A DNA stretch of 63,977 nt, filler included, from Chiloscyllium plagiosum (lineage: Eukaryota), in the NCBI RefSeq assembly GCF_004010195.1. It is 8 parts of 8 records of this genome, joined end to end, with 100 filler letters (N's around TTAATTAATTAA, not from the genome) between each part and the next. Parts side by side here need not be neighbours in the genome. Positions count along the whole stretch, not along the records: positions 27,125 to 44,794 come from NW_025213736.1; 7 more parts are not named here. One strand, 5' to 3'. Positions 26,501 to 60,473 of the stretch are shown piece after piece. The notes under the pieces are model-generated. The model was given only the letters and a program-made list of their open reading frames with translations. It made no database searches and was not told the DNA's origin. Within the stretch, counting starts at the first letter, position 1. Each line of letters starts with the position of its first letter. The translations under genes were made by a program, and so were the position numbers.

Positions 26501-27203
26501 CATGAATTCATGGTCATCATTAGGCTCCTCACTGCAGATTTTTAAAATTGATTTCAAATTCCCCCATCTGCCACGGTGGGATTTGAGCCTGTGTCCCCGG
26601 AACCATATATAGGTCTCTGTGCATTAATCACAGAAGGTCAGTATGTAGATACAGCAAGTCATCAGGAAAGCTCATAGAACGCTATGGTGTGTTGTGAGGG
26701 GAAACTGAATGCAAGACTTCATTGAAACATGCAAGATCCTGAGGGGCCTTGACCGAGTGGATGTGGAAAGGAAGTTTCCTCTTGTGGGAGAGTCCAGAAC
26801 CAGGGATCACAGTTTAAAATTAAGGGAGAGACCATTCAAAACAGAGACTTGGAAACATGTTTTTAATCTCAAAGGTTGCCAGTCTTTGGAATTCCCTTCC
26901 TTAAAGGGCAGTGGATGCAGAATCTTTAGATATTTTTAAGGCAGAGGTCGATAGATTCTTGATGACTGAAGGGATGGAACATTATTGGAGAATGTAAAGT
27001 TGAGGTTTAAATCAGATCAACCACNNNNNNNNNNNNNNNNNNNNNNNNNNNNNNNNNNNNNNNNNNNNTTAATTAATTAANNNNNNNNNNNNNNNNNNNN
27101 NNNNNNNNNNNNNNNNNNNNNNNNCCTGCACTCAGTGCTCTGACCAATGAAGGTACATGTGCCAAACCCTTTCAATACACTCGGTGCTTGAGGCAATGCT
27201 TTC

Positions 27204-27418
27204 AAGAATCTATGAGTCTGAACCCTCAGGGTCCTCAGTGTTCAACATCACTACCCTGTGCCCTAACATTAACTCTGTAAGAATCTATGAGTCTGGACCC
27301 TCAGGGTCCTCACACTACCCTGTGCCCTAACATTAACTCTGTAAGAATCTATGAGTCTGGACCCTCAGGGCCCTGTGTTTAACATCACTACCCAGTGCCC
27401 TACCATTAACTCTATAAG
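27204..27418. repeat. Tandem triplication of a ~65-75 bp unit
   Basis: AAGAATCTATGAGTCTG(A/G)ACCCTCAGGG...CACTACCC.GTGCCCTA.CATTAACTCT.T three times; single copy at ~50466-50540. Confidence 0.9.
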
Positions 27419-27886
27419 TTGTGACCTGATTTGTCTTCTCAAAAAGCAACACGTCGTATTCATTTAAATTAAACTCCATCTGCCACTTCTCAGCCCATTG
27501 GCCCAGTTGTTCAAGATCTCATTGTACGTTTAGATAACTTTCACTGCCAGTTATACCACCAATGTTGGCGTTACGTGCAAACTTACAAACCATGCCCCAT
27601 TCAATGTTTTCATGGCTTTCAACCAATATTGTACCCTGTTTGCCTTTCTCCCACATATCCGTAGCATTTTTTTAAGGATTGAAGAAATCTATCTCCTTAT
27701 TGAAATCATTTAATGTTTTGTCCTCAATCAATTTCTGTGGTGGAGAATTCCAAATGTTCACCATTCTTTTGCTGAACAGTAAACAATCAGGTTCAATGTT
27801 ATCGGGGTGTTGTCAAGACTGGTCAGCAGCAAGATTAATGATGATCCCATGAATGGAATTGCCTTCTAGAGGGGCCGAGGTGCCTT

Positions 27887-28072
27887 AGAACATAGAACAT
27901 AGAAGAATACAGCGCAGTACAAGCCCTTCGGCCCTCGATGTTGCGCCTACCCAAGCCCACCCAACCTACACTAGCCCACTATCCTCCATATGCCTATCCA
28001 ATGCCCGCTTAAATGCCAATAATGAGAGAGTGTCCACCACTGCTACTGGCAGGGCATTCCATGAACTCACGA
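27887..28072 (-). mobile_element. Short CR1 3' tail insertion specific to this IgM cluster
   Basis: (AGAACAT)n tail; absent from the paralog at ~51005; CCTT on both sides. Confidence 0.8.
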
Positions 28073-31000
28073 CCTTCTTCAGCTTCCATTTTGCATGCTG
28101 ACATGTCCCTTCGGCAGCATGTTCCAAAATTGTGATCCATGAGGATAAGGGCGTACATGTTTGTAAATGCTTCTCCTGAAAGCTTTCCTCCAAATCAGAC
28201 TTTAACTTGGCTCTCAACTAGTTCCCTGCCCGTTTCCTCTTCCTCAATCACAGCCATGGGGCTCACTTCCTAACAGCGCTGTGAATGTGCTAATACNNNN
28301 NNNNNNNNTGACACTTCCACCTGTCTAGACACCTGTCTAGAGATTCAAACAACCACTGGAAGAATTGAAAATTATTTGAGGCACGTGGTTTCCTTTTGTG
28401 TGATTTGACTGTGTTTTCACTGAATGAACAGAGCTATTTCTTAATCATACAATAGGAATGAAGCTTCCCTAATTTTTAGCAAGGCGATCACACATTATAT
28501 TTCTTTATTCCAGGGAAATATAGTGTTAAATTAATGAAATATGATGATTGGGATGTTTCAATTGGAAATTATCAGAGATTTAAAGTTTACTTTCTTGAGC
28601 AATTAACTCCAGCCTCATTGTGTCATAGTACTCACAGGAATGTCTTTCAGAAATGGTGTCTCCCTTTGTTATGGGCAGTCGAATCAGTAAATATGGGATA
28701 GGTTTTTGCTTGTTAATCAAAGCTGTTGAAGAGTTTTAGCTAAAGGGAGACCTGTGGATTTAGCTCACAGATGCACCATGATCTAAGTAAGTGGTGGAAG
28801 AGCTCGAGGGGCTGAGTGCCCTCCTCTTGCTCCTACCTTCCTATCATTGTGTCATTCATTAAGCTAGCACTGGCGGTGAACACTTTTTATTAAAATATTT
28901 CAATAACTTAATTGTTTCACACATGCTTTAAAAAAACAAACTTCTGTTGATTATTTGGAACCGGATCATTGGCATTCTCTATTTGAGTGATCAAAAGGAC
29001 TTCCACCCACTTACAGCAGCCACTGCACTCTGGAGTGTGTTGTTACTTCATAATAGTTTCTTGTGAAACTACAGCTCGAGATCTGGGCGCTCAAATTCAA
29101 TGATTCTCTGATATTTAATATCTCTGAACATTCGCAATCTGTTCAAATGCATCTTTTCTCTGAAGAACGTGTTTAATCGAACAGAACTTTTTTCAATGAA
29201 ACAACAAACTTTAAATGTTAGAAAACCAAAATAAAAGACAGAAATTTCTGAAGAAACTCAGCAGGTCTAGCAGCTCCTATGGAGAGAAGGCAAGGTTAAC
29301 CTTTCGCATCCAGAGACCCCCTCTTCAGCAAATTGTTTTCATGTTTTTGGCGCAAGAGCTCACACCTGTTGAGATAAACAGTGATTACGTTGGCTTGACT
29401 CCTGTTGGAAAAATGAATTCTTAGCAGAGGTACTGGATGGTCTGACATAGCAATTGAAGACCAACTGAAAAGCTATCACCATCTGCTGCAAGTGTTGGAT
29501 TCAGCAGAACCCCCATCGTACTGAACAATCAGATTCAGCCACAGCACTAGTTTAATATAAAGTAAAACAGCCTAAGCATAATCTCATCAAATATGCTTCG
29601 AAAATGATTCATTCTGGATTAGTTATAAATGATATTGTTCGAACAGTATGTCAAAAGATGGGATTTCTTTGAGCACATTCTCCATTAACCCCATCTAGCG
29701 ATGCCCAAAAGCTTGTGAACAAATATTGATCTGGAAAAAGCTGCTAACCACCAAAATTCTGTTTAATATCTAAGAGACACAAGTCAGGACAGCGATTGAA
29801 TAGATTTCACTGGCCTCTGTGAGTGGAATTCCAACAAACAGCCAAACATTTCAATCTGCTTTCTTGCACTGAATTAACCTGATAAGAGATGGTATAATAT
29901 AGCTCTCTAACAGGTTGTAAGTGAACACAGGCCACCTGGTACAGAATCAGGGACCCTACTACAACTTCACAACAGACCTGAACACAATGAGCTCGACACT
30001 ATCACGGAGAACACAGCCCACCTGTTTTGACAGTACATAAACCATGTTAGTTATTAACACCTTCCAACAATCGGGGATTGTTCCAGAATGTTTGTACAAT
30101 GAAAGTAACATTTCAACATTTATCCAAGAATACTTTGACAGCAGCTCCAAATTGTTCACACTCTATGGGAACTACAGAGAAATAAAACTAGGAATTTCAT
30201 TGCCATCAATTCACTGTCACTGGATTTCAACCGAGATATCCCTTCCTCTTTCACCTGTGAATGTTGCTGCACCAGACGGTCTACGTAGTTTGAAAAAGAT
30301 TAAAATGATTTGAAGTGTAATATGACCGTTGCCAGTGACATTAAAAGCTGATAATAGGTTTTCAAATAATAAGATGCAAAAAGAATTCTGATTCTACATT
30401 GTGCCACGAAACATGTCCTGCACAACTGAGGCGCAAAGAAAATATACAACATATTTCCCTCTGCCTCACTCAATCAAATATCTATTGTTGCCAACAACCA
30501 ATGTCAAAACGCTTGCTATCTGCCTTTTGTTCCTGAAACGTTTGTTCTGATTGGAACAACTTAGTCAGGGCTCTCAATTCTGAGGCACCTAATCGAATAT
30601 TGTATTTCTGGCAGATAAAAGTGCTTTTGAAGCTCGAGATGAAATTGAACTGTCTGAGATTCAGGAATCCGAACTGGACAATTTACAAGTGCTCAGGACC
30701 GTTGACAAGTGAGTCAGAGATAGCACTGAAACAAACTGTACAACAGACTTAATGCTAGAGGATACATTGCTCAACTCCTCACGTCAAATATATTCACTGT
30801 AATTGAACATTCATCAGAATGTGAACGAGAATGTGTTCACAATGAACATAAATAACCACTGAGTTAATAAACTTAATAAGTCGTTGCATTTAACAAAATT
30901 ATTGAGGTGGGAAATATCACACAGATCTGGAGGAAATGGATTCTTGTCTAAATTATTTTTTACATATTCTTAAAACGTTCCTTGAACTGTGGAGATTTTG

Positions 31001-31180
31001 CATGCACTGCATAAAGTCAATACTGCATTCCAGTGTGGAAAGCATTTCTGTTGAAGGAACTAGGGCAAGGTCATTTTCTTGTTAACTGCTTTTAATAAAC
31101 AAAAATGTTTAAAAAGGTATGAATTGAAAACATGCTTCTGTCTGGAGTTGCCCGCTTTAGCGGATGTCTAAGTAAATGTG

Positions 31181-32053
31181 GGCACTGCTGCCTCACAGAT
31201 CCAGGTACCCAGGCTCGGTTCCAGCCTCGGGTGACTGCCTATGTGGAGTTTACACAATCTCCCCTGTGACTGTGTGGATTTCCTCCCACAATCCAAAGAA
31301 GTGCATGTCAGGTGAACTGGTCATGCTATATTGTCTATAGTGTTAGGTGCATTAGTCAGGGGTAAATATAGGGTAGGGGAATGGGTCTTTGTGGGTTACT
31401 CTTCAGAGGGTCGGTGTGGACTTGTTGGGCCAAATGGCCCGATACATACTGCAGGAAATCTAATCTAAATGTTTGTCACACTAAACTAATGTGAGCAGAT
31501 TCCTTCCGATCGCTACATTGCAATAAATCTGTCAAGTCTATTAATTAAAATAAATATTACTCTATTTTCAGTGTCTGAATAAACAATGTGATCTGTTATC
31601 GTCTAGTTCATGTCTTCTGCAAATTTGTGAAATCTGCATACGTCTGAACACTTCGATGTAAATTGAATTCTCTGTGTTTGCAGCAAGTACTCCCATGATT
31701 TTAAGAGTAGAGTTCCTACAGTATGGAAACAGGCCATTTGGCCCAACAATTCCACACTGACCCTCTGGACAGTAAGTAGCCCAGCCAGACCCATTCACCC
31801 TAAGTTATATTTACAACTGACTAATGCACCCTAACCTACACATCACTGAACACTATGGCTGTGCTAAATTGCAAACTCACCTGACCTGCACATCTTTTGG
31901 ACTGTGGTAGGAAGCCAGAGCGCCCGAAGGAAACCCACGCAGACACAGGGAGAATGTGCTAACTCCACACAGGCAGTCACCCGAAGGTGGAATCGAATTT
32001 GGGACCCTGGCGCTGTGAGGAAGCAGTGCCAACCACTGAGCCACCATGCTGCC
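31181..32053. mobile_element. Convergent pair of HE1/V-SINEs in the JH-C-mu intron
   Basis: Plus copy ~31181-31470 and minus copy ~31715-32053; the same pair is at ~55437-55725 and ~55970-56308. Confidence 0.85.
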
Positions 32054-33605
32054 CTGCGAGTTCTGAGTGGAATATTTTAATTAATTTGAAATTTGGCCTT
32101 GGTCACATAATTCACTATAGCAGTTGTTTCCGAAAGAATGACTCTTCAGTTGATATTTTGTTGTAAAATGTAACTATTTATTTAAAATGCACAGATTGGG
32201 AACACCTAAAGCACTGTGCAGATTAAATAATTCAGTTAATGTTTTATTTTTATCCTGCAAATCCAGTTTAATCAGGGACATAACAATTAATTAACTCAAG
32301 TTACGTGTGAAACTGATCAAAGCAGTGAAACTGACCTGTTCTTCATAGAATTGAGCAGAATTTCCAAATGGTCTTTGCCAATGATCTTTTCCAGCCAGAA
32401 AAATATGTATGTAGTGTACAGCGGAATTGAAAGCTGTTTCTTGATCAATTATAACACAGTCGTGGCATTTTTGCTCAAGAGCAAGAACTATTAGAAGTTT
32501 AGACTTTTGAAATTCTATTTATATTTCTCTATGACTTGTAAACTGTTTAAAGACAGACCTTGTGACTGAACTAGATAGTGGAGTTCTGAATGTGGATTGT
32601 AAAGCATGGATTAGATTAATCCTTAATTATTACTTTTAAGTAAAAATGGCGCCCGAAGGTATCTGTTTTCCCTTCATTTCCAAAACCTTTGCGATTTGCC
32701 TTTCACTTAATAATAGGTTTTATGAAATTTCAACTCGCATGCTGATTGCATTGAATGAGGAACCTGCAGCGATTCACTGTCGCCAACCGTGTTAACATTG
32801 CGAAAACAATGTAGAAACCAAAAATGGTTTCCCAAATTTAATGTTACCCAAGCACAGTCCCTCCTCAACAGATCAACGATCACCAGATCACAACACGGTG
32901 TGTTTGCAGCAGAACTAGCTCTGCAAACATTTTCAACAGAACCAAGAACATGATGTAACCTCACCAAAAAAATCCAAATTGAAGTCGAACAAAGCTGCTC
33001 AGAATCAAGCAAACTAATGATTAAATTGAATAGAAATAACAAATCATAACAGCAACCTTGTTTGTGAGGGGACTTAACACTTAAAGCTGTAACGTTTCTG
33101 GCAACAGTTCAATTTATTTCCAACCTGTACACCCTTCTTGATCGTGACAATCTTGTGCAGCGCACTGAATGGACAAATATTACCACATTATAATTTTAAG
33201 TTAGTTTCAATTACATAATCTGATCAATTCTGCAGTTTCAGATTTTAGTCCCAGTTTTTTATTTTGAATGAGGCTACTCAAAACAAAATTTAGTTAGTTT
33301 ACAATTAGAACTGAGTTTTTTTTATAAGTCAATGCATTAAAAACTCGTTTTTTTTCATTTCTCACACTTGCGGGTTTCTGCCTTAAATTGTTTTTCAGAC
33401 CGTTACAAATGGATGTAATGTTTTCAATCAAGCAGAGAAAAATGTGTCATATAAGTTTAACAAATGCAGAAATGATTCATGTAAAACAAAAGAACTTCAC
33501 AAATATTGGTAATGAAAAGTAATCCAGAGAGTCAATCTCCTCACCAGAAAGAAAACACCAATTCAGAAAGCATGAAAACGCAGATCAATTTCACAAACTG
33601 AATAA

Positions 33606-33900
33606 GAATCCAATCAACTCAATTCAACAGAATCAAGGAAAATAAAATCAGAATCCAATCAACTCAAAACAACAGATTTGAATGAATTATAATCAGAATC
33701 CAAACAATTCAATTCAACAGAATCAAATAAAACAATTTTCAAAGCCAATCAACACAATTCAACAAAACTAAGTAAAAACAAAGTCAGAATCCAAACAACT
33801 CAGTTCAAACCGATCAACTAAAACAAAGCCAAAATCCAATCAACTCAATTCAACAGAATCAAGTAAAACAAACTCAGAATCTAATCAACAGAATGCAATA
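33606..33900. repeat. 45-bp imperfect tandem repeat (about 6.5 copies) downstream of JH
   Basis: GAATCCAATCAACTCAATTCAACAGAATCAAG.AAAA.AAA.TCA units starting near 33606, 33651, 33696, 33741, 33787, 33832, 33877. Confidence 0.85.
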
Positions 33901-34406
33901 TAGCACCGCAAGAAAATTTTATGACAGTTTCTAACCTGCTTGTCATCAACAAAATTAACAAAATAAATGAGAAAATATAATCAGGCTAAGAACATATATT
34001 CAAGAAATGAATAATGATATTTTAGCATATTTTAATCATGTTTGGTAATATCTCGAACATCTTTGAATTCTTAGCGTTTGTTGTTGATAATAAAACTCAC
34101 AGTCAGGGTCTCACTGACATTAAACATTATTTATAGCTGACTGATTAAGAGACATTAGGTGTTTCAAGTAACCCAGCCACACAGAATGCCCATCTGACCA
34201 AAAAAAGAGATACACCGAGCAACTGACTCCATCATCCCCATTGTAACTATTTGCTGAGCCTTAACTGAAGTCTATAATCAGTCTGAACAAAAATCAATCC
34301 GAACCAAACCAAACTCAGCATAGAATCTGAGTTTCATTTAATTCAGAAATTAGTCACATGAATAGAAAGTTTTTAAAAAATCACTAAGAAAGTTCAAAGT
34401 TCTTAC

Positions 34407-34471
34407 CTGAAGTCACTGTCACCATGGTCCCTTGGCCCCAGTAATCAAGACCCCAGTACCCACTGTCGTAT
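34407..34471 (-). other. Pre-joined IgH D1-D2-J segment (open frame YDSGYWGLDYWGQGTMVTVTS)
   Basis: ATACGACAGTGGGT (D1) + ACTGGGGT (D2-like) + CTTGATTACTGGGGCCAAGGGACCATGGTGACAGTGACTTCAG|gtaaga; the internal RSSs and intervening DNA seen in the paralog are absent. Confidence 0.92.
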
Positions 34472-34499
34472 CACAATGATGTAGACCAGTACACTCATT
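34472..34499 (+). promoter_or_regulatory. 12-RSS on the 5' side of the joined DDJ
   Basis: CACAATG, 12-nt spacer ATGTAGACCAGT, nonamer ACACTCATT. Confidence 0.85.
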
Positions 34500-34859
34500 C
34501 TCTGTTGTTTACTCGAGGTCTCAATTTTCATTTGAAAGAGCCATTTAGTTCTGATCATGTTTAGAATTAATGCCATAGTCGACGTAACAATTAGCAGTGA
34601 TTTCCTGAGCTGTCAGATATACTAAAACTAACATTTTGTCAGAGCATTTAATTAATGGAAGTGTTAGCAGTACATATGACATGCCCAAAACATTGTCCCA
34701 TTGTGTCACCAGTTTGCTAGTTTAAATGGTACATTTCCTCTTTGATAGTTTTGTAAGAGGCAGCCTGAGGTCTGCTTCAGATTGCAGTTGGTATAATTGC
34801 ATTTAAAACTCGTACTGACCGTCAGTTTATGATGGAATTGACAAAATGTTCCCTCGAGC

Positions 34860-34898
34860 TGTTTTTGAATGGGTCCAGCCCTGGTTCCTCTCGCTGTG
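34860..34898 (-). promoter_or_regulatory. 23-RSS 3' of the VH stub
   Basis: CACAGCG, 23-nt spacer, TCAAAAACA. Confidence 0.9.
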
Positions 34899-34919
34899 GT
34901 CTCACCTCCGACTGGACAC
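34899..34919 (-). pseudogene. VH exon stub (21 nt; V domain deleted)
   Basis: tttaaag|GT GTC CAG TCG GAG GTG AGA C then the heptamer; the paralogous exon (59996-60300) is 305 nt. Confidence 0.9.
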
Positions 34920-35047
34920 CTTTAAAAAAGAAAACAAATAAACCATGAGCATTAATGCTGATGACATGATGGCTGAGTCTTTTACATTCCAGCGGTAGAC
35001 TAACATTGAGACAGTAACAAAGAGAGACTTGAACAAAAAACACTCAC

Positions 35048-35096
35048 ATGATAACAAAGTCAGTAACAAACTGAGAAAAATTGTCGACACAATCAT
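35048..35096 (-). CDS. IgH V leader exon ([16 protein letters not shown])
   Basis: ATG at 35096, hydrophobic signal peptide, phase-1 donor T|gtgagt; TATAAA at 35184-35189. Confidence 0.9.
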
Positions 35097-37366
35097 TCTG
35101 ATAAATTGTGGGAAACGGTTCTGCTAAGATCTTTCGAAACAGAGCCGACCCAGGAGTGTTGAATTACGGTCCAGTGCCAAAGGTTTATATGGCCATCGGA
35201 AGGGGCAGGCTTACAGCTTCCGCATGTTGGATTCCTGCTGGAGGCTGAGACTGGATCCTGGTATCAGCTTGCATAGCCCGAACACATGGGATCATGTATT
35301 TACATGAGCTTTTGCTTAAACATGGACACATACACATCTTGGGATATTTCTTTTGCTGAATAGCTTCTTTGGAAGTAAATCTAAGTAGCTTCAGGTCTGT
35401 TTCACATGATAGTTGCATGTATTTTGTTTAAAAAAAACAAATTCAACTGGAAGTTAGCTCCCTTTATTTCTACATTCATTCACAAGCAGATAAAACTAAA
35501 ATGAAAGTTCAAACATATTACTAGCTAATAAAACAGTTGAGCTTTTCTTCTCTGGATATTGCAAGTCTCTGTCGCACTACAAAATAACATGTAATTCATA
35601 TGAACCATTTCAAAATTCAATTTAGTCAACTGAATACAGAGCGTGTCCAAAGTGATTATATTTAGAATATTCAATTAGAAATTAACTCCCTGTAATCCTA
35701 CATTCCACCACAAGCAGATAAAGCTAAAAAGAACTTCAATAATATTATTAGCCAACAAAATGAATGTCTTTATTTTTGCTGTCACTCAAAGTCTCTCTCT
35801 CATTACAAAATAACATATCATTTCTAATCTGCGTTTCTAAATTCAGTTTAGGCAACCTAATATGGAGCAAATCTAAAGTGATTATGTTCAGAATGTGAGT
35901 GTATGTCACTAAACAGTTTGGACCCGGAGATTAGAAGCACCTCCTTACATTGCAGGATGTCTCTCTTTGCATCTTTTTTTTCAAATTGCTCCGACACTAA
36001 AATGCACAGTAAAGGAAAGTTGTGTGCTTGAGAAACAAAATGTGAGTCCGCAGTGATACATAACACCGAGGTAAACTTTTGAAAGAGCATCTAATGAACT
36101 AGAACAAGAGAGTCCATAACTTTTTTTTTAAACCGTCAACGTCTAAACCATTGCAGGTAACTGTCTGGGTACACCAGGAATGTTTGGTTAAATTAGAGAG
36201 TATTACAGTATTAATTACCACGAATGTAGGTTATAAACAGTACATTCCTCTGCTCACTGATAGCTCTGACAGGGCAGTTAACTCATAAAAATCAGCAAAA
36301 ATTCACGGTTACACTACACCAGTATTAACCATGTATAAAGGGCCCACTCAGTTTTAATGAGATACATGAATCAGAGAATGGTGTAACAAGTGATGTGAGT
36401 ATGAAACAATTCAATTTTGTTAATTTACTTTGAGATGATAACAAATGTTACTGCAATGTGGGATTTTAGATCCATTAACTTCATATTCAGGAGCTTTAAA
36501 GATACTCAGTAAACAGGCTGAACTAACCAGAACGTCACTGAATTCAATGTTTTGTTTTCTGATAGTCATACAGTGAATGCTGTATTCAGTGACTTTCCTT
36601 TTAAAAGAAGAAATGCTAAGTGAAATGTATCCAATGTGAGTAAATGGGAAAATATAGCATGTTTCGTAGGATTTTACTTTAGTTGAGTCATTTTCCCTTT
36701 AATCGGTCAGATAGAATAGTTGGCAGCAATTAAGCTGACTGCAGAAAAGGTCCTTGAGTTCCCAGTTTCATTTACTGGAAGCAGGTGGAGTTTCTGCAGT
36801 GGTTCAAAGATATTCTGTCTCACTGTTGACCAGTTGGTGGAAAGCCAACTGCAAAACATAACCACCGCCTCCGCAGAAACAAATCGACTCAGCAACAATG
36901 CTGGAGAAAAGTTTATTTTTCAGTTATGTAACTTGGAGAACTAGTCACTCCTCTCATTGAAGGAAATATTCGCAGAGTCTCCGACACAACCTTAACATCA
37001 ACAGTTCATTCAAGGATCACTACAGCACTGTTTAATATTGAGAAAAACTGATCAATAGTCACAGAGTCATGTAGTGATACAGCATGGTTACAGACCCTTC
37101 GGTACAACCAGTCCATGCCAGTCATAATCCCAAAGTAAACTAAGCCCACCTGTGTTTACTTGGCCCATATCCATCCAAACATTTGATATTCATTTACTTA
37201 TCCAAATGTCTTCCAAAGGTTGTAAGTATCCACCGCCAGATCGTCTCACACACAAACCATTCTCTGTGTAAAAAGTTGTCTCTGACAGCCTTTTTAAAAT
37301 TTTTCTCCTCTCATTGTAAAAACATGTTCCCTATTGTTGAAATCCCTCACCATAGGGAAAATACGG

Positions 37367-39388
37367 CAATCTCTTCGTCAAAAATTGAAAACAAACCCAG
37401 CTCCCAACATTTACAAAATATCACAATGGATCTTCCTCGAGTCCAAAAAAGATTGTCCCCTTTAATCAATGATTTGTAAAATTTACTCACGTATCTACTG
37501 TGATAGACGTTTTCAAACAACTTCTGAAGTGCAAATGGTTCACATCAATCGGATTAAATTAACATTTCGTGCGCTACCCCACACACACAAAAAAACAAGT
37601 TTGTAAACATGATTTGCTCTGAGGAAGTCTACGATGGATTCTTTTATCAAACAAAATCATTTCCAATATTGTGAGCGCTCGTCTATCTTCTGTGCAATGG
37701 TCTGAATTTTAAGTTGAGTCTGACTGCAGATGAAACTGGCTGATCTGGGTAAAAATACAGTTTGTGCCTTTCACATTGTTAATGCATATTGCTGACTTTA
37801 GTTGAATAAAGAGATGTCGTCCCAGGCATCATCTGGCACCATTAATTAGACCATTAATTTCCACATCGCTAGCTGTGGGGTCAGATGGAGTTTATTGATA
37901 TGTGATATTTTTGAAACGAAAGCTTCTTACATTCCCAGTATGAATTATGTCAATTAGAGCCATTCACCTTTCCACTCATGGCTTTATAAACTTATATGAG
38001 GTCACACCCCGAACTCTCAACCTCCAGTGAGAAAAGTTCCAGTCTATCTGGATTTCCAACGGTGACTGTTCCCTCACATTCTGCTGTTTAAGATCCTCCT
38101 GCCACCCCAAGTCTACAGACAGTGTCCCTTGATACTAGTTCAAAGAAATGAAAGGAACTTGTCCCACCATATTTTTCAATTTTCTTTGGCTTCAAACACC
38201 ATAAAAAATAAATGTTCGTGTCATTGCTCATTTATGGGAGAATTACGTTTACACAATATCTGCTGAAATACCTGCAGTACCATCCTGAATCTGGTTCGCA
38301 GGTTCACCTGTTGTTCACAAAAGCAACCAGACATCAGGGAACAATAAACATCGCCCACACCCAACCCTCCACCATTCCCCTCTGTACTTTGCACTTTGTG
38401 AAATCCGTGTTGTCAATAATCAGTTAAAAGAAAGTTTTTTTTTTAAACTTTCTTGATTCATGTTGCTGATCTTGGCTGAATAAAGGTATGTTGCTGTCAG
38501 CTTTTCTGGGGAACATGTCTGCATTTTTTTCATGTCAGTTTACAATGATATTAAGTCAAGAATAGTCAAAATATCCTGAGAAACAATGTTTAGAAATGGG
38601 CCTATTAGCTCCTCTGGGATGTACCAACTGTTTGCATATTGATACAGGTCTGCCCCTACTTTTTCCCCATAAGCTAGGATTTACAGCATTGGAGATCATA
38701 TCTATGTTGATAATGGATTAGACCCTACAAAATGTTCCCGAATGTTTACAGTGCTATCACCTGCAGGGTTATGGACAACATGCTATAAAGTGGGTGTTCG
38801 CTGGAAGGCTCTGTCTTCACGTGATACAGGTGCGATGGGGAAGTGATCTCTCTCTGTCGTGAACACTACTCGAAGTTCATCTTTCCTACTTTGTCTCGTT
38901 CAGAGACTCTAATTCACATGATTCATACCGAAAATATTCCAAGCATTCATTTCAATGAGATCAATACACTCCACGTGATAGTCTGGCTAGTGATGTGGAA
39001 ATCAATGGTCTAATTAATGGTGCCAGACGATGCCTGGGACAACATCACTTTATTCAACTAAAGTCAGCAATATACATTAACAATGTGAAAGGCACAAACT
39101 GTACTTTTACCCAGATCAGCCAGTTTCATCTGCAGTCAGACACAAAATTCAGACAATTGCACAGAAGATAGACGAACCCTCACAACATTGGAAATGATTT
39201 TGTTTGATAAAACAGTCCATCATAGGCACTTCAAGTTATTTGAAAACGTCCTTCACAACAGATATGTGAGTAAATTTTAGAAATCATTGATCAAAGGGAC
39301 AATTTTTTTTGGATTCAAGGAAGATCCAGAGTGATATTTTGTAAATGTTTGGAGCTGTGATTGCTTTAAATTATTAACTAAGATATTG
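37367..39388. repeat. Long inverted repeat (arms 37367-37873 and 38986-39388)
   Basis: For example TCTGACTGCAGATGAAACTGGCTGATCTGGGTAAAA versus TTTTACCCAGATCAGCCAGTTTCATCTGCAGTCAGA; the right arm lacks ~100 bp present in the left arm. Confidence 0.9.
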
Positions 39389-39914
39389 ACACACAGTGCA
39401 CAACTTCACAATTTGCTGCAAATGAAACCATTGTGAATCATCGCCTGATGGTTCAGAATTTAACAAGGACCTAGCAAGGTTCGTGAATGGACCAACGAAT
39501 GATTCATGAAATTTAACAAAAGCATTTCTGAAATGATTAATTTAGAAAGGAAGATTGTAGAGACACAAATTCACATCTCTGTTTGCATTTCAATATAATA
39601 TAAATTACTTTTCTATTATATCCTCAAATACTTGTGTGTTTGTTCATATTTAATACTCTATCTTGTTCCAGTGTTAAGATAGTTTCTTTATTTATTTCAC
39701 TCAAGACTGTATACGTATTTTTGCCTCAGTATTGACCAAACTCGGATTGGTGCCAGCTTATATCACTTGAGCTGCTTTTTCAGGAAGTGAATCTCTCCAC
39801 CTGTTATGTCAAAATAATCTGTTCATGCTTAGATCAAAATAAATCCTGTTAATATCATCCCAAATTCAGGCTCGGTTATTTTGTATTTATTCATTGGAAA
39901 TGAACAGAATTTTA

Positions 39915-41000
39915 CCGGCCTGTTCTTGGTGGAGTGGGAGAGGGAGTTAAAGTGGTCAGCCACGGGTTCGTGGGGTTGGTTGGCACTGGTGTCCCAGAGA
40001 TGTTCTCTGAAATGATCCGCAAGTTAGTGTCCTGTCTCTCTGATGTAGAGGAGACCACATCAGGTGGAACAGACACGATGGATGACATTTGTGGAAGTAT
40101 AGATAAATTTCTCTGGGATGTGGTAGGATCATTTGGGGCCTTGTCGGAGGTGAGGGGGGAGGTGTGGGCTGGTGAAGGGGCATGGGCCTGACGAGGGAGT
40201 CGCGGAGGGAATGGTGTCTCCGGAATGCAGATAGGGGTAGGGAGGGAAATATACCCCGAGTGATGTGTTCTGTTTACAGGTGGTGGAAGCAGCGGAGGAT
40301 GATATGATGTATGCGAGGTTGGTGCGGTGGAAGATGAGGACCAGGAGGGCTCCCTGTTGCGATTAGAGGGATGGGGTTCAAGGGCATCGTCGACCACAAG
40401 GAAGGGGAAATTGCAGTCTTTGAAAAAGGAGGTTATCTGGGATGTTTTATGGTGGAACTGGTCCTCCTGGGAGCAGGTGCGGTGGAGGCAGAGGAATTGA
40501 CAATAAGGGATGGCATTTTTACAGGAGGTCAGGTGGGAGGAGTGTAGCCCAGGTAGCTGTGGGAGTCAGTTGGCTTGCAGTTAATGTTTAGTCGGTCACT
40601 GGAGATAGAGGTGGAGAGGTCTAGGAAAGGGAGGGAAGTGTCCGAGATGGTCCCTGTGAAGTTTAGGTCAGGGTTGAAGGTTTTAGTAAACTTGATGAAC
40701 TGTTCAACCTCCAAGTGGTAGCAAGAGGTGGCGTTGATACAGTCATCAATGTATCGGTGGTAAAGGTGGGCAATGGTACCAGTGTAGCTGTGGAATATTG
40801 ACTGTTCCACATATCTGACGAAGAGGCAGGCATAGCTGGGGTCCATACAGGTGTCCATGGCTACCCCTTTGGTTTGGAGGAAGTGGGTGGATTGAAAGGA
40901 AATGGAGTTGAGGTTGAGCATGTACTATTTGGGTTGGCGTGACAGGAAGAAACGGAGGGCTTCGAGGCCGACATCATGGCGTTTGGATGTGTACAGGGCC
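39915..41000 (-). mobile_element. Degenerate Penelope-like element (RT and GIY-YIG remnants)
   Basis: HFLQTKGVAM.T.M.PSYACLF..YVE...RYIDDC...LPFLDL...KPTDSHSYL; frameshifted endonuclease region toward 39915. Confidence 0.85.
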
Positions 41001-42799
41001 TGGACATTCTGTTCATTCTGGGGCTTATCAATAGCTTGCAGTTATTATGGAACTGCAAGGGCAATGGCTGGAAACTCGGAGAAACCAATGTTTAAGTCCT
41101 CTGCTTGAAGGGAAATTTTGACCAGAACATTTAAACACCACAAAGCTCACTGCAGGAAATGCCAGGGCTGCAACTTTTGATAATATTTGAAACTTTGTTA
41201 AAAATAGAGATTTTTAGTCATAGTTTCTGAAATAATCAAGAAAATAATTAACCGTTAGAACAAGCTCTTTCAAAGAGAGAGGATTTGCAAGGTTTGAAAC
41301 CACACAGTGCAGTGGTTTATTTGAATTCAATCTCGGTCAGAGTTAGATACAGCCAAGGTGATCTCTCCATATATTGATTCTGTTAATCTGACACACCAAC
41401 ATACCTGTCTGTATTATTTGTTTAGTTGATCAAAATTTAGGAAACAGATCAAACAGAATGTATTCGGCTGGGAAGGTGATGGATACAGAAGACAGAATCA
41501 AAAACTGGGAATATTAATTCTGAAGAGAGAGTAACAAGTAGTACAAGATCAAAGACATGACAAGGCGCAAGTCGATATATCCCAGACGTTAGTGAATCGA
41601 ATGAGCTTGTTAGATGGTCGAGAGACTCGTCCAATGACGTCCTGGAATCAGACCGTGAAACAGAGATCGAAAGGTCGATTTGCAAATGTCACTTCAATGT
41701 AATCGCTTCACACTCTGTGTCCTGATATAGGCCACATTGGCAGATGTTTCCGCCAGATTGCATCCCCTGAGTTTATTTTCTGATCAGAAGTGAGATGTGT
41801 GGCTTGCTGCTGGCACATAGAAACCGGACGTTGCGCGCCAGCTGAGAATGATAATACTTTCCGTATTATCAGCACAAACAGTCTTCCTACCTCTGAGGGT
41901 GAACATACACTGACAGTGTCAAGAACGAACGGGCAGATTGTTGTTGGTCTCAACATTGTATTCAATTCCATTCCCATTTTCCAGAATGAAACAGAAGAGA
42001 CACAAGATTATTTCAGCTAGAGTAAATTATCTGTCAGAGAGATAATAGCTATCATCGGGTGAAAGGAGCTAAATGACAATATGTAGTTTCGCTCATAAAC
42101 CTATGTTTAAAAATAGAAAGCTTGAGGGAAGCTAATAAATCAGCATTCATTAAAAGTTGGAATTGTAAGGTTTCAGCAATAAAATTCAGCATGGCTTTGG
42201 TGGAAGTGGTTGATTCTGTTTTCCGGAGAGGCAATGAGATGTGACATCGGGTGTAAAAAGTGGATGTAATCCTTCTTGCATTCAATAAAGATTTTGACCA
42301 GATCTTGCGTCTTCAATATGGTAAGGGTTCATGGGATCTGGTGCAGTTTGGCAAATGCATGGAAGGTTTATTTGTTGGCAGAAGGTAATGGTCGAAGGCA
42401 GTCATTGTGAAGACAGCTTGTGTCCAGTGGCTTACTATATGATTTGGTGCTGGATCATTTGCTGTTTGCAGCGTATATGAAAGATCTAGTCAAGAATGTA
42501 GCAATTTTGATCAATAAGTTCAAAGATGAGGTGAAAAATGTTTGCTTTTACAATTAATGAAGAAAAATCCAGTGTGACATCAATGGCCTTGCCTGTCGGA
42601 GAGAAGAATTGAAAACAGAACATTATAACCTAAAGTCTGTGAAGTAAAGCATTTTCGAGACTAACAATTGAAGCGAATATACCATGCATTGTTGGGATCG
42701 ACACAATACAAAGGATAAGCGATCTTCTGTTGTGAACATCCACATCATGGAGTGCGGGTTGGACTTATCGTCTGGAGATATTGTGACTAGACCATTAAT

Positions 42800-44350
42800 T
42801 CAGGAAACAGGGGTCTGAGCCCGCAGTGCTGCCACATCGAGTTGTGAATTAAAGTTGATAATTAAACAACTCATTGAAGGAATAAGCTCCACAGATATTC
42901 CCTTGCTCTGCTTTGGAGAGCACAACACATCAGCGCAAACGTTAAGGCTGAAGCATTCACAGCAATCTTCAGCCAGAAGTGCCAATTGTCTGATCCATCT
43001 CGGCATCTTCCATAGATCACCAATATCACAGATACCTGTCAGCAGGGAATTCGCTTCTCTCCATGTGAAATCAAGGCACTGTTGGGTGGGGTGGGGGGGG
43101 GGGGGGGGGTGAGGGCGGGGGCGCAGGGGTTACTGGAAATGCTATGGAGCCTGACAAAATTCTAGCAATAATTCTGATGACTTGTGCTCGCCAAGCTCTC
43201 CCGGTACAGCTAAAACACTGGCATGGACAATGTGGAAAATAGGCCAGGCACGTCCTGTGCACAGAAAATAGGTCAAACCACCCTGGCGAATTACTGCCCC
43301 ATCAGTCCATGCTCAATCATGAGTTAGATGTAGGAAGATGATATCGTGACATAAAATGTGGGTTACGCAAGGCCTACTCAGCTCATGTCTGAATTACAGA
43401 CTTGATTTAAACATGGACAGAACTGAATTCCAGAAATGAGGGGAGAGTGACAGCCCTTCACATTAAGGTCACATTCGACAGACTGTGATATTACGGAGTC
43501 GTAACAAAACTGGATTCAATGGGTAGTAGGCGGCAAACTACCTGCTGCCTGCAGTCATATCTCACACATTGGAAGATGGCTCTGCTTGTTAGAGGGCAGT
43601 CGTCTCAGCCAAAGCAAATCTCTGTTGGAGTTCCGAAAGAAAGTGTCCTTGGCCGAATCATGTTCAGCTGCTTCAGCAATGACCTTCCCTCCATCAGAAG
43701 ATCAGAAGTGAAATCTGCATTAATCTAGCACTTTTTTGTGACTCCTCAGTCCACATTCAAACGCAACAAAATCTGGACAATATCCCGACTTGAGCTGACA
43801 AGAGGCACATAGCATTCACACCACAAAACTGCGAGACAATGACCATTGGCACTAAGAGACAATCTAACCAAAACCCCTTGATATTCAATAGTGTTACCAT
43901 CACTGAATCCCTCACCATCGACACCCTGGGTTTTATTGTTCATTAGAAATTGAGCTGGACACTCCATATAAATACAATGGTTGTACGAGCAGGCCAGAGG
44001 CTAGGAATACGACAGCGAGTAACTCACCCTCCTGACTCGCAAAGCCAATTGACTGTCAAAGAGACAGAAGTCAGGAGGCTAATAGCACAGCTCACCCCTT
44101 GACTGGATAGGCGCAGCTTCAACTGCACTCAAGAAGCTTGGCATTGTCCAGGACAAAAAAATCCCACTTGATCAGTAGCACATCCACAAGCGTCCATTGC
44201 CTCCAAATCTGATTCTTAGTACCTGCCATATGCACTATTTAAAATACAACACTGCAGTAACTTAGCCATTTCCTCAGACAGTACCTTCCCACTACCACTT
44301 GCATCTCGAAGGACAGGAGCAACAGATACATGGGAACAGCACCACTGTAA
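42800..44350 (+). mobile_element. Degenerate non-LTR retrotransposon RT region (CR1/L2 group)
   Basis: QSYL...VGVPKESVLGRIMFSCFSNDLP resembles the GVPQGSVLGP motif; NYCPIS upstream. Boundaries approximate. Confidence 0.7.
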
Positions 44351-44894
44351 GCTCCTCTCGAAAACACTGGCATCTTGACATGGAAATATTCATGGATCCT
44401 TTACTGTAATTGGGTCAAGATCTGGAATTCCCTTCCTCAGGCCACTTTGGAACATGTTACTTCAGAAAGGCAGCTTACTGCCATCTGCTGAAGGACATCT
44501 ACGGACAACTAAAAGCAACCACCATGTTCCACGAGTCAATAAAAAAATCGTTGAAGCTAACATGACAGTTTGATAAAGTGGTTGAGGAGGCATTATGAAT
44601 ATGTAATAAGCAATCAAAAGGTTTGGAGTAAAGTTCCAGAATCAGTCCCTACCATGGTAGCTTCAATTAATAAAAGAGTATGAAATGAAAATGCTGGAAT
44701 AATGAACGATAATGGCAGACCTACCAAAGGTTTGAAGCATGTTACATGGTTCAGTCTTGTCCTTCAGAGGAGGACGTCTGACCTTCCTACCTGGNNNNNN
44801 NNNNNNNNNNNNNNNNNNNNNNNNNNNNNNNNNNNNNNTTAATTAATTAANNNNNNNNNNNNNNNNNNNNNNNNNNNNNNNNNNNNNNNNNNNN

Positions 44895-58730: not shown

Positions 58731-58778
58731 CTGAAGTCACAGTCACCATGGTCCCTTGGCCCCAGTAGCCAAGGTAGT
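58731..58778 (-). CDS. IGHJ: IgH JH segment (YLGYWGQGTMVTVTS), unrearranged
   Basis: WGxG motif, donor G|gtaaga; RSS at 58779-58817 (CACAGTG, 23 nt, ACAATAACT). Confidence 0.95.
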
Positions 58779-59172
58779 CACAGTGTTACATTCTCAGGAC
58801 TGGGTCACACAATAACTAGCTCTGCATAAAACAAATCAAAAATCTACCATCATTTTAAATTTTCAGAACCACAGGCAAAATAAAGTCACGATAAATCTTC
58901 ATCACATAATTGCGCTAGTGAATTCTGATCATTCTTAATAAACTTTAATGCTGTTTTATACTTCACAGAGTAACACATGAGCTGATTCTCAAAATCCAAA
59001 ACTGGTCTATCAATAATTACCCAACACATCTACAAATTAAATAGTGATACTGGCATAAAACCCCACAGAACTAATACTGCACTGAAGGTTAAGACGGTTT
59101 GTAGAAGTAATCACTGACTAGTTTCAAACAATGGAGGCTGAATAGGTTTTTGTATTGATCATAATTGCCGTG

Positions 59173-59187
59173 TTATTCCAGTTATAT
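59173..59187 (-). CDS. IgH D2 segment ATATAACTGGAATAA with 12/12 RSS
   Basis: 3' RSS CACGGCA-12-ACAAAAACC (59145-59172); 5' RSS CACTGTG-12-TCAAATACT (59188-59215). Confidence 0.9.
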
Positions 59188-59555
59188 CACTGTGAGACAC
59201 GTTGTGTCAAATACTATGACAGACTGTAAACTGTAAAATTCAGATAATTTCTTCACTTCCTAGAAAGCAGTGATTCAGACTCCTCTAAAAATGATTTGGT
59301 GCATTATTTCAGGTTTTACTATTCATTGTATTTTGAAAGCTTGGAATACTTTTCCAGGTTCGGTCTGCATTTAACTTGACAATCAACACGAAGAAAGTAG
59401 AACCAAATTATACATTTGTACAAACTAGCACTACTGGATTACATTTAAATTACATCTCACATTATTTCTTGCTCCTGCCATGGTAGAAATCACCAATTGA
59501 GATAAACACTTGTCAGTGGTTATTGTATGAGGATGTCGCTGTGCACAACACTGTG

Positions 59556-59569
59556 ACCCACTGTAGTAT
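59556..59569 (-). CDS. IgH D1 segment ATACTACAGTGGGT with 12/22 RSS
   Basis: 3' RSS CACAGTG-22-ACAATAACC (59518-59555); 5' RSS CACAATA-12-ACACTCATT (59570-59597). Confidence 0.92.
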
Positions 59570-59995
59570 CACAATAATGTAGACCAGTACACTCATTCTC
59601 TGTTCTTTACTCCAGGTCTCAGTTTTCATTTAAAAGAGTCATTTAGTACTGATCATGTTTAGAATGAATGCCATAGTTGACATAACAATTAGCAGTGATT
59701 TTCTGAGTTGTCAGATATATTAAAACGAACATTTTGTCCGAGCATTTAATTGATGGAAGTGTTAGCAGTACATATGTGATGCCCAAAACATTGTCCCATT
59801 GTGTCACCAGTTTGCTAGTTTAAATGGTACATTACCTCTTTGATAGTTTTGTAAGAGGCAGCCTGAGGTCTGCTTCAGATTGCAGTTGGTATAATTGCAT
59901 TTAAAACTCGTACTGACCGTCAGTTTATGATGGAATTGACAAAATGTTCCCTCGAGCTGTTTTTGAATGGGTCCAGCCTGGTTCCTCTCGCTGTG

Positions 59996-60300
59996 GTATC
60001 TTGCACAGTAATAGATGGCGGTGTCTTCGATCTTCAGGTACCCCATGTCCAACGCGAAAATGTTGTTTGAATTGTCTTTGGACGCAGTAAATCGACCCTT
60101 AATGGCTGGTGCATAGTTACTGCTGGATGGACTATAGTACCAAAGCAGCCACTCCGGACCCTGTCCGGGCACCTGTCGCACCCAGTGCATGTAGCTGCTG
60201 CTAAGATCGAACCCGCTGGTTTTGCAGGTCAGTTTCAGGCTGCCTGCGGGACGGCCAGTCTCTGCCTCTGGCTGGGTCAAAACAATCTCCGATTGAACAC
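59996..60300 (-). CDS. IGHV: IgM VH exon, unrearranged, open frame
   Basis: [47 protein letters not shown]...KGRFTASKD...[10 protein letters not shown]; RSS CACAGCG-22-TCAAAAACA at 59958-59995. Confidence 0.97.
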
Positions 60301-60424
60301 CTTTAAAAAAGAAAACAAATAAACCATGAGCATTAATGCTGATGAAATGATGGCTGAGTGTTTTACATTCCTGCGGTAGACTAACATTGAGACAGTCACA
60401 GAGACTTGAACAAAAAACACTCAC

Positions 60425-60473
60425 ATGATAGGAAAGTCAGTAACAGACTGAGAAAAATTGTCGACACAGTCAT
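60425..60473 (-). CDS. IgH V leader exon ([16 protein letters not shown])
   Basis: ATG at 60473, donor T|gtgagt, TATAAA at 60533-60538. Confidence 0.92.

What the first reader, a model, noticed from the sequence alone, without database searches (positions are those of the whole stretch)
34407..35190. IgM cluster with no V domain but retained recombination signals: leader + 21-nt V stub + RSS pair + in-frame pre-joined DDJ
Seen: the paralog at 58731-60540 aligns on both sides, but here the V exon is 21 nt instead of 305 nt and encodes only VQS-EV-R before the heptamer. TATA box, leader, both leader-intron splice sites, V 23-RSS, D1 12-RSS (CACAATG, closer to consensus than the paralog's CACAATA) and J donor are all intact, and the DDJ is an open frame. 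Established: shark IgH genes are V-D-D-J-C miniloci, RAG obeys the 12/23 rule, and germline-joined clusters exist. Inference: one RAG event with junctional diversity could give leader-EVR-(N)-YDSGYWGLDYWGQGTMVTVTS-C-mu in about one join in three. That would be a mu chain carrying only a CDR3/FR4 peptide, like D-mu or heavy-chain-disease proteins. The DDJ could alternatively accept V segments from other clusters. I know of no description of this configuration, but a recent pseudogene is equally plausible.
Basis: partly seen in the sequence, partly recalled or inferred. Interest (0 to 1): 0.85.

Follow-up and report, generated by a model that had tools for sequence, protein, structure and literature searches.

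The report
Shark antibody gene missing its V exon
A shark-type antibody heavy-chain mini-gene has lost nearly its whole variable exon but keeps its recombination signals and a pre-fused D-D-J piece; it is most likely a dead gene copy, not a new kind of antibody.

Summary
The described anatomy is really in the sequence, on the minus strand. It reads TATA-like box, 49-nt leader exon, 128-nt GT..AG intron, 21-nt V remnant, and a 23-spacer RSS (heptamer 6/7, nonamer 7/9). Then come 427 nt to a 12-spacer RSS (good heptamer, nonamer only 4/9), a fused D1-(7 nt)-J of 65 nt, and a phase-1 splice donor.

Contigs of related clusters in three public runs leave the window exactly at 34903|34904, running into FR3 and FR1 of a full V exon. 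They also leave at 34458 and 34450, running into the D1 3' and J RSS heptamers. The V deletion and the D-D-J fusion are therefore real differences from the canonical cluster.

No run held this locus itself, with a best word share of 0.30. Germline origin, rearrangement and expression are untested. No C exon or Ig-like frame lies in the 17.7-kb piece.

Best reading: a defective minilocus, meaning a RAG-type D-D-J join plus an unrelated blunt V deletion (0.6). Rivals are a somatic or low-coverage contig (0.2) and a functional V-less or acceptor unit (0.1). It is a curiosity of moderate interest.

The parts
35184..35190 (-). TATA-like box (ATATAAA), 88 nt upstream of the ATG
   Evidence: Read directly. 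No perfect octamer nearby.
35048..35096 (-). Leader exon, 49 nt: ATG plus 16 codons plus 1 nt (phase 1), hydrophobic signal peptide, donor CAT|GTGAGT
34920..35047 (-). Leader intron, 128 nt, GT..AG with a T-rich tract before the AG
   Evidence: Related contigs cover its 3' part and diverge at 34938 (table 7).
34899..34919 (-). V-exon remnant, 21 nt: the end of the signal peptide, the first 5 nt of FR1 and the last 5 nt of the V coding end. The deletion joint lies between 34904 and 34903. The joint reads GAG|GTGAGA, which resembles a 5' splice site.
   Evidence: Loose ends at 34903 and 34904 in X1, X5 and X15 run into FR3 and FR1 of a full V (table 7).
34860..34898 (-). V 23-RSS: heptamer CACAGCG (34898-34892), 23-nt spacer, nonamer TCAAAAACA (34868-34860)
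   Evidence: This stretch is shared with the related contigs up to 34903 (record 21).
34500..34859 (-). V-to-D1 intersegment. The V coding end to the D1 coding start is 427 nt in all.
   Evidence: Related contigs at 95-99% identity cover it (records 15, 20, 21). About 400 bp is the norm in nurse shark (PMC2435157).
34472..34499 (-). D1 5' 12-RSS: nonamer AATGAGTGT (4/9), 12-nt spacer, heptamer CATTGTG
   Evidence: It was not picked up by the RSS scan because of the weak nonamer.
34458..34471 (-). D1 coding segment, 14 nt, apparently untrimmed
   Evidence: Related contigs (X1, X15) continue past 34458 into a CACAGTG heptamer, the D1 3' RSS that is absent here (table 7).
34451..34457 (-). 7 nt between D1 and J: a D2 remnant or non-templated letters. 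Which of the two was not decided.
   Evidence: Bounded by the two loose-end places 34458 and 34450. No D2 sequence of a relative was available.
34407..34450 (-). J remainder, 44 nt, ending in the W-G-x-G motif, FR4 and a phase-1 donor CAG|GTAAGA. It is 4 nt shorter at its 5' end than the J of the related contig.
   Evidence: The X15 loose end behind 34450 shows 4 further coding letters and then the J RSS heptamer. Frame.
32600..34406 (-). Start of the J-to-C intron, holding a 45-nt tandem array at 33601-33898
   Evidence: Related contigs tile 32655-34436 at 95-99% identity (records 9-14). Tandem array. No C exon down to 27125.

Best explanation
This is the 5' half of a cartilaginous-fish heavy-chain minilocus (leader-V-D1-D2-J type, probably IgM) that carries two independent lesions relative to its canonical relatives.

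1. D1, a 7-nt D2 or N remnant, and J are fused. Both inner RSS pairs are lost and 4 nt are trimmed from J. This is the footprint of RAG-type joining, as in the known germline-joined shark Ig genes.
2. A blunt internal deletion removed the V exon from the sixth base of FR1 to five bases before the V coding end. No microhomology and no CAC-type signal lies at the 5' edge, so ordinary break repair is more likely than RAG.

No V domain can be encoded, so the locus cannot make an antigen-binding heavy chain. It is best read as a young pseudogene whose promoter-proximal parts, RSSs and J have not yet decayed.

What it could still do is inferred, not shown:
- It could give sterile transcripts.
- A leader-to-C splice would be in phase, like the V-less IgW transcripts.
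- In lymphocytes it could undergo a stub-to-DDJ join that is in frame about one time in three.
For: The deletion edges are exact. Related contigs in 3 of 3 contig runs (X1, X5, X15) leave the window at 34903 into letters that translate as the FR3 end (..EDTAIYYCA). In X1 and X5 they leave at 34904 into FR1 (..[10 protein letters not shown]) (table 7; translated by eye).

The fusion edges are exact too. At 34458 the relatives continue into a CACAGTG heptamer. At 34450 they continue into 4 coding letters plus the J heptamer.

The letters on either side of the deletion share no base with the deleted ends in those relatives.

The intersegment is 427 nt, against the roughly 400-bp norm (PMC2435157).

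Germline-joined VD-J, VD-DJ and VDJ clusters, and their origin by RAG in germ cells with little N addition, are established (PMC5192425; PMC2193156). Pseudogene clusters exist in nurse shark (PMC2435157).

No Ig-like frame lies anywhere else in the piece. Pfam gave 0 hits for 10 of 10 ORFs tried.
Against: Apart from the V deletion, no second lesion is visible. The leader, both intron splice sites, the 23-RSS, the 12-RSS heptamer, the J frame and the donor are all intact, which a long-dead gene would not show. The deletion is therefore recent, or something keeps these parts.

Germline status is not shown. No public run held this locus. The best word share was 0.30, and at many places every laid contig differs from the window.

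The C exons were not seen, so 'otherwise intact' cannot be claimed either.

The 7 nt between D1 and J could be N letters, which would favour a somatic join.
Confidence: 0.6

Rival explanations
1. The contig does not represent the germline. It is a low-coverage or single-molecule contig from a lymphocyte (thymocyte or B-lineage cell), or an assembly error. The D-D-J join, and perhaps the V deletion, would then be somatic or artefactual.
For: V-DDJ is a documented somatic two-step intermediate in nurse-shark lymphocytes. It is prominent in Group 5 loci, and most IgH loci are partly rearranged in thymocytes (PMC2435157).

The piece is only 17,670 bases and is one of several short pieces. No public run held more than 0.30 of the words. 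No contig bridging the deletion joint was listed.
Against: A collapse artefact needs a repeat at the edges, and there is none at 34903|34904. A joint of this kind must exist in at least some reads to be assembled.

One cell's unique junction rarely reaches a consensus assembly. The flanks also differ from the related contigs at many places over 4.8 kb. One search lists 40 such places and leaves 47 more unlisted, as expected of a distinct locus or species rather than a somatic variant of a sampled cluster.

D1 is untrimmed, and at most 7 letters could be N.
Confidence: 0.2
2. The locus is used. It may make a V-less mu chain after a stub-to-DDJ join or by leader-to-C splicing. Or it may serve as a ready D-D-J-C acceptor for V segments of other clusters, or as a regulatory or decoy RAG substrate.
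For: The promoter-proximal TATA, leader, splice sites, a 12/23-compatible RSS pair and an open J frame all survive. Of 99 trim-only joins, 33 are in frame and stop-free.

The leader donor and J donor share phase 1, so leader-to-C splicing would be in frame. V-less IgW with the leader spliced to the first C exon is known in spiny dogfish and nurse shark, and V-less secreted IgD in catfish (PMC5192425). Ig V segments trans-rearrange to TCR-delta in sharks (PMC12227049).
Against: There is no RNA, protein or rearrangement evidence at all. The raw RNA run laid 0 reads, which is no test.

The D1 nonamer is 4/9. There is no octamer and no C exon in the piece.

Inter-cluster joining is very rare in nurse shark (PMC2435157).

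The deletion joint creates a splice-donor-like site. If used, it would put leader plus 14 nt in phase 0, out of frame with a phase-1 C acceptor (inference).

From general knowledge, a mu chain without a V domain but with its first C domain would be expected to be retained in the ER.
Confidence: 0.1
3. Both lesions are products of RAG activity in germ cells. The V deletion would be a cut at the cryptic heptamer near the V end (TACTGTG, 3 nt upstream of the 3' edge), joined to a second cut near the start of FR1.
For: The 3' edge lies 3 nt downstream of the embedded heptamer-like TACTGTG seen in the related contigs (loose end at 34903). This is the site class used in VH replacement (general knowledge). 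The D-D-J join shows that RAG-type joining acted on this locus.
Against: The first 30 letters of FR1 in the related contigs hold no CAC-type heptamer that could pair with it (loose end at 34904). RAG cleavage needs two signals.
Confidence: 0.07

Closest known systems
Germline-joined (partly or fully pre-rearranged) Ig clusters of sharks, skates and ratfish
   Same: Coding segments are fused with loss of the intervening RSS pairs and with trimming at the joint, inside a cluster that otherwise looks like its split relatives (PMC5192425; PMC2193156).
   Different: The germline types named in the texts I read are VD-J, VD-DJ, VDD and VDJ. A germline V-DDJ was not mentioned there. Here the V is also almost wholly deleted, and germline origin is not shown.
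V-DDJ two-step somatic intermediate of nurse-shark IgH rearrangement
   Same: It has the same configuration: D1, D2 and J joined, V still apart, and the V 23-RSS and D1 12-RSS left facing each other across about 400 bp (PMC2435157).
   Different: That is a per-cell somatic product with a full V. Here it stands in a genome assembly and the V exon is a 21-nt stub.
IgM pseudogene clusters of nurse shark (Groups 6, 7, 8 and G2C)
   Same: It is a member of the heavy-chain cluster family that cannot give a functional chain (PMC2435157, passages).
   Different: I could not read what lesions those pseudogenes carry. The primary paper (Lee et al. 2008) was not held. A clean V-exon deletion with all signals kept may or may not be among them.
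V-less Ig heavy-chain transcripts (IgW delta-V of spiny dogfish and nurse shark; secreted V-less IgD of catfish)
   Same: These are heavy chains made without a V domain, from a leader spliced to the first C exon. The phases here would allow the same splice (PMC5192425).
   Different: Those arise by RNA splicing from loci with a V, or from a dedicated leader, and they are observed as RNA. Here the V is missing in the DNA and no RNA is known.
Mouse D-mu protein and human heavy-chain-disease proteins (recalled general knowledge, no call)
   Same: Both are truncated heavy chains carrying little or no V domain ahead of the C region.
   Different: D-mu starts from a D-segment promoter and ATG. Heavy-chain-disease chains arise by somatic deletion in a clone and usually also lack the first C domain. 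Neither is an inherited V-less locus with RSSs.

Membership tests
Cartilaginous-fish IgH minilocus (cluster) | Split leader followed by a V exon that encodes a V domain | tested here: not met
   The leader and intron are present, but the V exon is 21 nt and encodes no domain. No V-like frame lies elsewhere in the piece.
Cartilaginous-fish IgH minilocus (cluster) | V 23-RSS facing a D 12-RSS about 400 bp downstream, followed by a J with a splice donor, all on one strand | tested here: met
   23-RSS at 34898-34860, 12-RSS at 34499-34472, 427 nt between the coding ends, and a J donor at 34407|34406. The D1 nonamer is weak (4/9).
Cartilaginous-fish IgH minilocus (cluster) | Sequence kinship with canonical clusters on both sides | tested here: met
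   Contigs at 95-99% identity cover all 30 bins of 32600-37400 in X1 and X5. They carry a full V, a D1 3' RSS and a J RSS where the window lacks them.
Cartilaginous-fish IgH minilocus (cluster) | Linked C-mu exons downstream of J | tested here: inconclusive
   No Ig-like open frame lies in the 7.28 kb from J to the piece's edge. The C exons may lie beyond the edge, so the isotype is inferred.
Germline-joined shark Ig gene | Fused segments with RAG-type junction features (loss of RSS pairs, trimming, little N) | tested here: met
   Both inner RSS pairs are absent, J is 4 nt shorter than in the relative, D1 is whole, and 7 nt are unassigned.
Germline-joined shark Ig gene | Present in non-lymphoid (germline) DNA and shared among individuals | not testable with these tools
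   No run held the locus, with a best share of 0.30. The single read-laying run showed only relatives.
Ig pseudogene | A lesion that precludes a functional chain | tested here: met
   Loss of the V domain. An untrimmed join is out of frame and hits a stop.
V-less Ig heavy chain (IgW delta-V / catfish IgD type) | Observed transcript with the leader spliced in frame to the first C exon | not tested
   Only phase compatibility could be shown: the leader exon is 49 nt (phase 1) and the J donor is phase 1. No C exon and no RNA were available.
D-mu-type truncated mu chain | DJ-C transcript translated from an upstream ATG in the D reading frame | tested here: not met
   In the J frame a TGA, formed by the heptamer's last two letters and the first D1 letter, stands directly upstream of the D-D-J. 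No ATG lies in it. Any product would have to use the V leader.

The most novel reading that the evidence does not exclude
This would be an inherited heavy-chain cluster that has lost its V domain but is kept as a working RAG substrate. Its single remaining 12/23 join would give a leader-(2-3 residues)-CDR3/FR4-C-mu chain. Alternatively the pre-built D-D-J-C would capture V segments from elsewhere. Either way it would be a natural V-less or acceptor minilocus in the oldest lineage with V(D)J recombination.
Probability: 0.08. Interest if true: 0.75.

Novelty: new variant of a known kind. Interest (0 to 1): 0.35.

Why it matters
If germline, it adds a configuration (V apart, D-D-J fused) to the list of pre-joined shark heavy-chain genes. 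That would be a further footprint of RAG acting in germ cells.

It is also a natural minimal substrate: two RSSs, 427 bp apart, with almost no V coding flank. It could be used to ask whether a shark minilocus still opens, transcribes and recombines without its V exon, and whether a V-less mu chain is tolerated or counter-selected.

If it is only a dead copy or a somatic or assembly product, it matters mainly as a caution for annotating Ig clusters on short unplaced contigs.

Tried and rejected
Independent reads
- The look-up of sequencing runs gave no run with more than 0.30 of the words.
The raw RNA run X22 laid 0 reads, which is no test. The output lists no contig bridging 34903|34904, but 1279 pieces were not shown, so presence or absence of the joint in those runs is unknown.

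Other searches for the joint
- A 73-aa frame that crosses the joint found no candidate in the protein collection. Relatives with a full V would fall outside the length limits, so this blank says little.
- A 24-nt string across the joint had 0 exact matches in metagenome contigs, as expected for animal DNA.

Annotation of the piece
- Rfam gave 0 matches.
- Pfam gave 0 families for 10 ORFs. One of them is a reverse-transcriptase-like frame with a Y-I-D-D motif.
- Motif scans for C1-set and V-set frames found none.
- Octamer-like sites were at chance level.
- No signal-joint-like heptamer pair turned up.

Rejected readings
- A spliced-out or retro-processed V was rejected: the deleted stretch would begin TG and end AA in the relatives, not GT..AG.
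- Slippage or collapse between repeats was rejected: there is no shared base at the edges.
- RAG at both edges was kept only as a weak rival.

Species and literature
- The species could not be named. Run organisms are coded, and a peptide word search in papers gave 0.
- Eight paper searches found no description of a V-deleted IgM cluster with kept RSSs in the held library. 'V-DDJ' occurs in one paper only, as a somatic form.
- Subscription papers (Kokubu 1988, Lee 2008, Hsu 2016) were not held. Supplements were closed and may list such loci.
- Papers seen: PMC2435157, PMC5192425, PMC2193156 and PMC12227049 as found passages only; PMC2191167 as abstract and references only.
Full report
**What is there.** The finding lies on the minus strand of a 17,670-base piece (27125-44794; 12 N at 28297-28308). 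Read 5' to 3' on that strand, the parts are:

- a TATA-like ATATAAA at 35190-35184
- a 49-nt leader exon at 35096-35048, which starts with ATG, encodes a hydrophobic signal peptide and ends in phase 1 at a CAT|GTGAGT donor
- a 128-nt intron at 35047-34920 with a T-rich tract and AG
- a second exon of only 21 nt at 34919-34899
- directly after it, a heptamer CACAGCG, a spacer of exactly 23 nt and a nonamer TCAAAAACA, together 34898-34860
- 427 nt after the V coding end, a 12-spacer signal at 34499-34472, whose heptamer is good but whose nonamer matches only 4 of 9
- a 65-nt coding stretch at 34471-34407 that ends in the J motif and a phase-1 donor CAG|GTAAGA

Only the J frame of that stretch is open. 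In that frame a TGA, built from the end of the heptamer and the first coding letter, stands directly upstream.

In an RSS scan of the whole piece, the V signal is the only minus-strand hit with a 7/9 nonamer. Loose hits numbered 27, against 9.0 +/- 3.5 in 200 shuffles.

**Comparison with canonical clusters.** No public run held this locus, and the best run held 0.30 of 122 sampled words. I used the single read-laying run on 32600-37400 with three contig runs and one raw RNA run.

The contigs laid at 95-99% identity. At many listed places every contig differs from the window, so they are paralogous clusters or clusters of related species, not this locus. That makes them a useful outgroup. Four edges stand out:

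- At 34903, contigs of X1, X5 and X15 leave the window and run on into letters that I translate as the end of FR3 (..EDTAIYYCA).
- At 34904, contigs of X1 and X5 arrive from letters that translate as the start of FR1 (..[10 protein letters not shown]).
- At 34458, contigs of X1 and X15 continue into a CACAGTG heptamer, the 3' signal of D1.
- At 34450, X15 continues into four more coding letters and the J heptamer.

Three conclusions follow.

- The V exon is deleted from the sixth base of FR1 to five bases before the V coding end, with the joint at 34904|34903.
- D1 (14 nt) is whole.
- J has lost 4 nt, and 7 nt between D1 and J are either a D2 remnant or non-templated. I had no D2 of a relative to decide which.

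The 427-nt interval fits the roughly 400-bp intersegment norm of nurse-shark clusters. A V-DDJ of about 0.8 kb from intron to J is the size class reported there (PMC2435157, passages).

**What could not be shown.**

- Nothing tests whether the two junctions exist in germline DNA of the source animal. The output lists no bridging contig but hides 1279 pieces.
- The raw RNA run laid no read at all, which the tool itself marks as no test.
- No C exon or other Ig-like frame lies in the 7.28 kb from J to the edge, or anywhere else in the piece. Pfam found nothing in 10 ORFs. 'IgM' is thus an inference from the J and from the V ends of relatives, and the state of the C exons is unknown.
- The protein collection held nothing like the frame across the joint.
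- The joint's 24-mer is absent from the metagenome contigs. Both of these blanks are weak.

**How it most likely arose and works.** The D-D-J fusion has the hallmarks of RAG joining: both inner signal pairs are gone and a coding end is trimmed.

Shark and skate genomes are known to carry clusters joined in the germline as VD-J, VD-DJ or VDJ. These are ascribed to RAG activity in germ cells with little N addition (PMC5192425; PMC2193156). V-DDJ itself is described only as a somatic two-step intermediate, prominent in nurse-shark Group 5 loci and in thymocytes (PMC2435157).

The V deletion looks like a different event. The edges share no base with the deleted ends, so slippage or collapse is unlikely. 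The deleted stretch is not GT..AG. The first 30 bases of FR1 in the relatives hold no CAC signal.

The 3' edge does lie 3 nt past the embedded TACTGTG that VH replacement uses in mammals (recalled). I therefore keep a RAG origin of the deletion only as a weak rival.

Without a V domain the locus cannot make an antigen-binding chain. I read it as a young pseudogene (0.6).

**What it could still do (inference).**

- An untrimmed stub-to-DDJ join is out of frame and meets a stop.
- The leader donor and J donor share phase 1. A direct leader-to-C splice would therefore be in frame, as in the V-less IgW transcripts of dogfish and nurse shark and the V-less IgD of catfish (PMC5192425).
- The deletion joint itself reads GAG|GTGAGA, which matches the donor consensus (recalled) at 7 of 9. 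In the relatives the same place reads GAG|GTTGTT. If this site were used, leader plus 14 nt would end in phase 0, out of frame with a phase-1 C acceptor.
- The joined exon model was used only inside one script to count frames. No search was made with it.

**Rivals.**

- *A somatic or low-coverage contig, or an assembly error (0.2).* The piece is short, V-DDJ is a common lymphocyte intermediate, and no independent read support exists. Against it, there is no repeat at the joint, and the flanks differ from all sampled relatives at many places.
- *A functional V-less or acceptor unit (0.1).* Every part except V is intact. But there is no expression evidence, the D1 nonamer is weak, there is no octamer, inter-cluster joining is very rare (PMC2435157), and a V-less mu with its first C domain would be expected to be retained (recalled).
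- *RAG-made deletion (0.07).*

**Novelty and verdict.** Eight searches of the held library found no description of a heavy-chain cluster with the V exon deleted but both signals and a fused D-D-J kept. Key subscription papers and all supplements were out of reach.

I rate it a new variant of a known kind, combining germline-joined and pseudogene Ig clusters. Interest is 0.35. The bold reading, an inherited and working V-less or acceptor minilocus, keeps about 0.08.

Noticed in passing
window 34899-34908 (minus strand): The deletion joint creates a sequence like a strong 5' splice site (GAG|GTGAGA, 7 of 9 to the recalled consensus), where related clusters read GAG|GTTGTT. If used, it would make a 14-nt micro-exon that is out of phase with the C exon.
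   Followed up: partly
window 33601-33898: An A-rich 45-nt tandem array sits in the presumed J-C intron, about 0.5-0.8 kb downstream of J. It has 6.4 copies at 74% match and also reads as a 136-nt period. Related contigs cover it too, so it is a shared feature of the cluster family.
   Followed up: no
window 37367-39388: A large inverted repeat lies upstream of the cluster. Its arms are up to 160 nt at 95% complementarity, with further arm pieces at 82-96 nt, and 1.1-1.8 kb lie between them. It may be a foldback or terminal-inverted-repeat element.
   Followed up: no
window 40532-40924 (minus strand), and 39915-40565: An open frame carries a Y-I-D-D motif like a reverse transcriptase, next to a 217-aa proline- and serine-rich frame. 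The region has GC 0.51 and GC skew 0.44. Pfam gave no hit at E 0.01.
   Followed up: partly
window 27125-28217: The downstream end of the piece holds 64-nt tandem repeats (27249-27374). It also holds minus-strand frames that look to me like the C-terminal part of a LINE polymerase (27518 and 27969-28217). Pfam found nothing for the latter. The piece may end inside a repeat.
   Followed up: partly
window 35441-35894: A tandem duplication of about 228 nt (two copies, 75-82% alike) lies 250-700 nt upstream of the TATA-like box.
   Followed up: no
window 32600-37400, runs X1 and X5: Contig word depths of hundreds to thousands stand in runs of only 1.5-2.3 thousand million letters. The whole 4.8 kb is covered by 95-99% relatives. 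The region is therefore highly multi-copy, or those runs are enriched for it or are RNA. I could not tell which.
   Followed up: no
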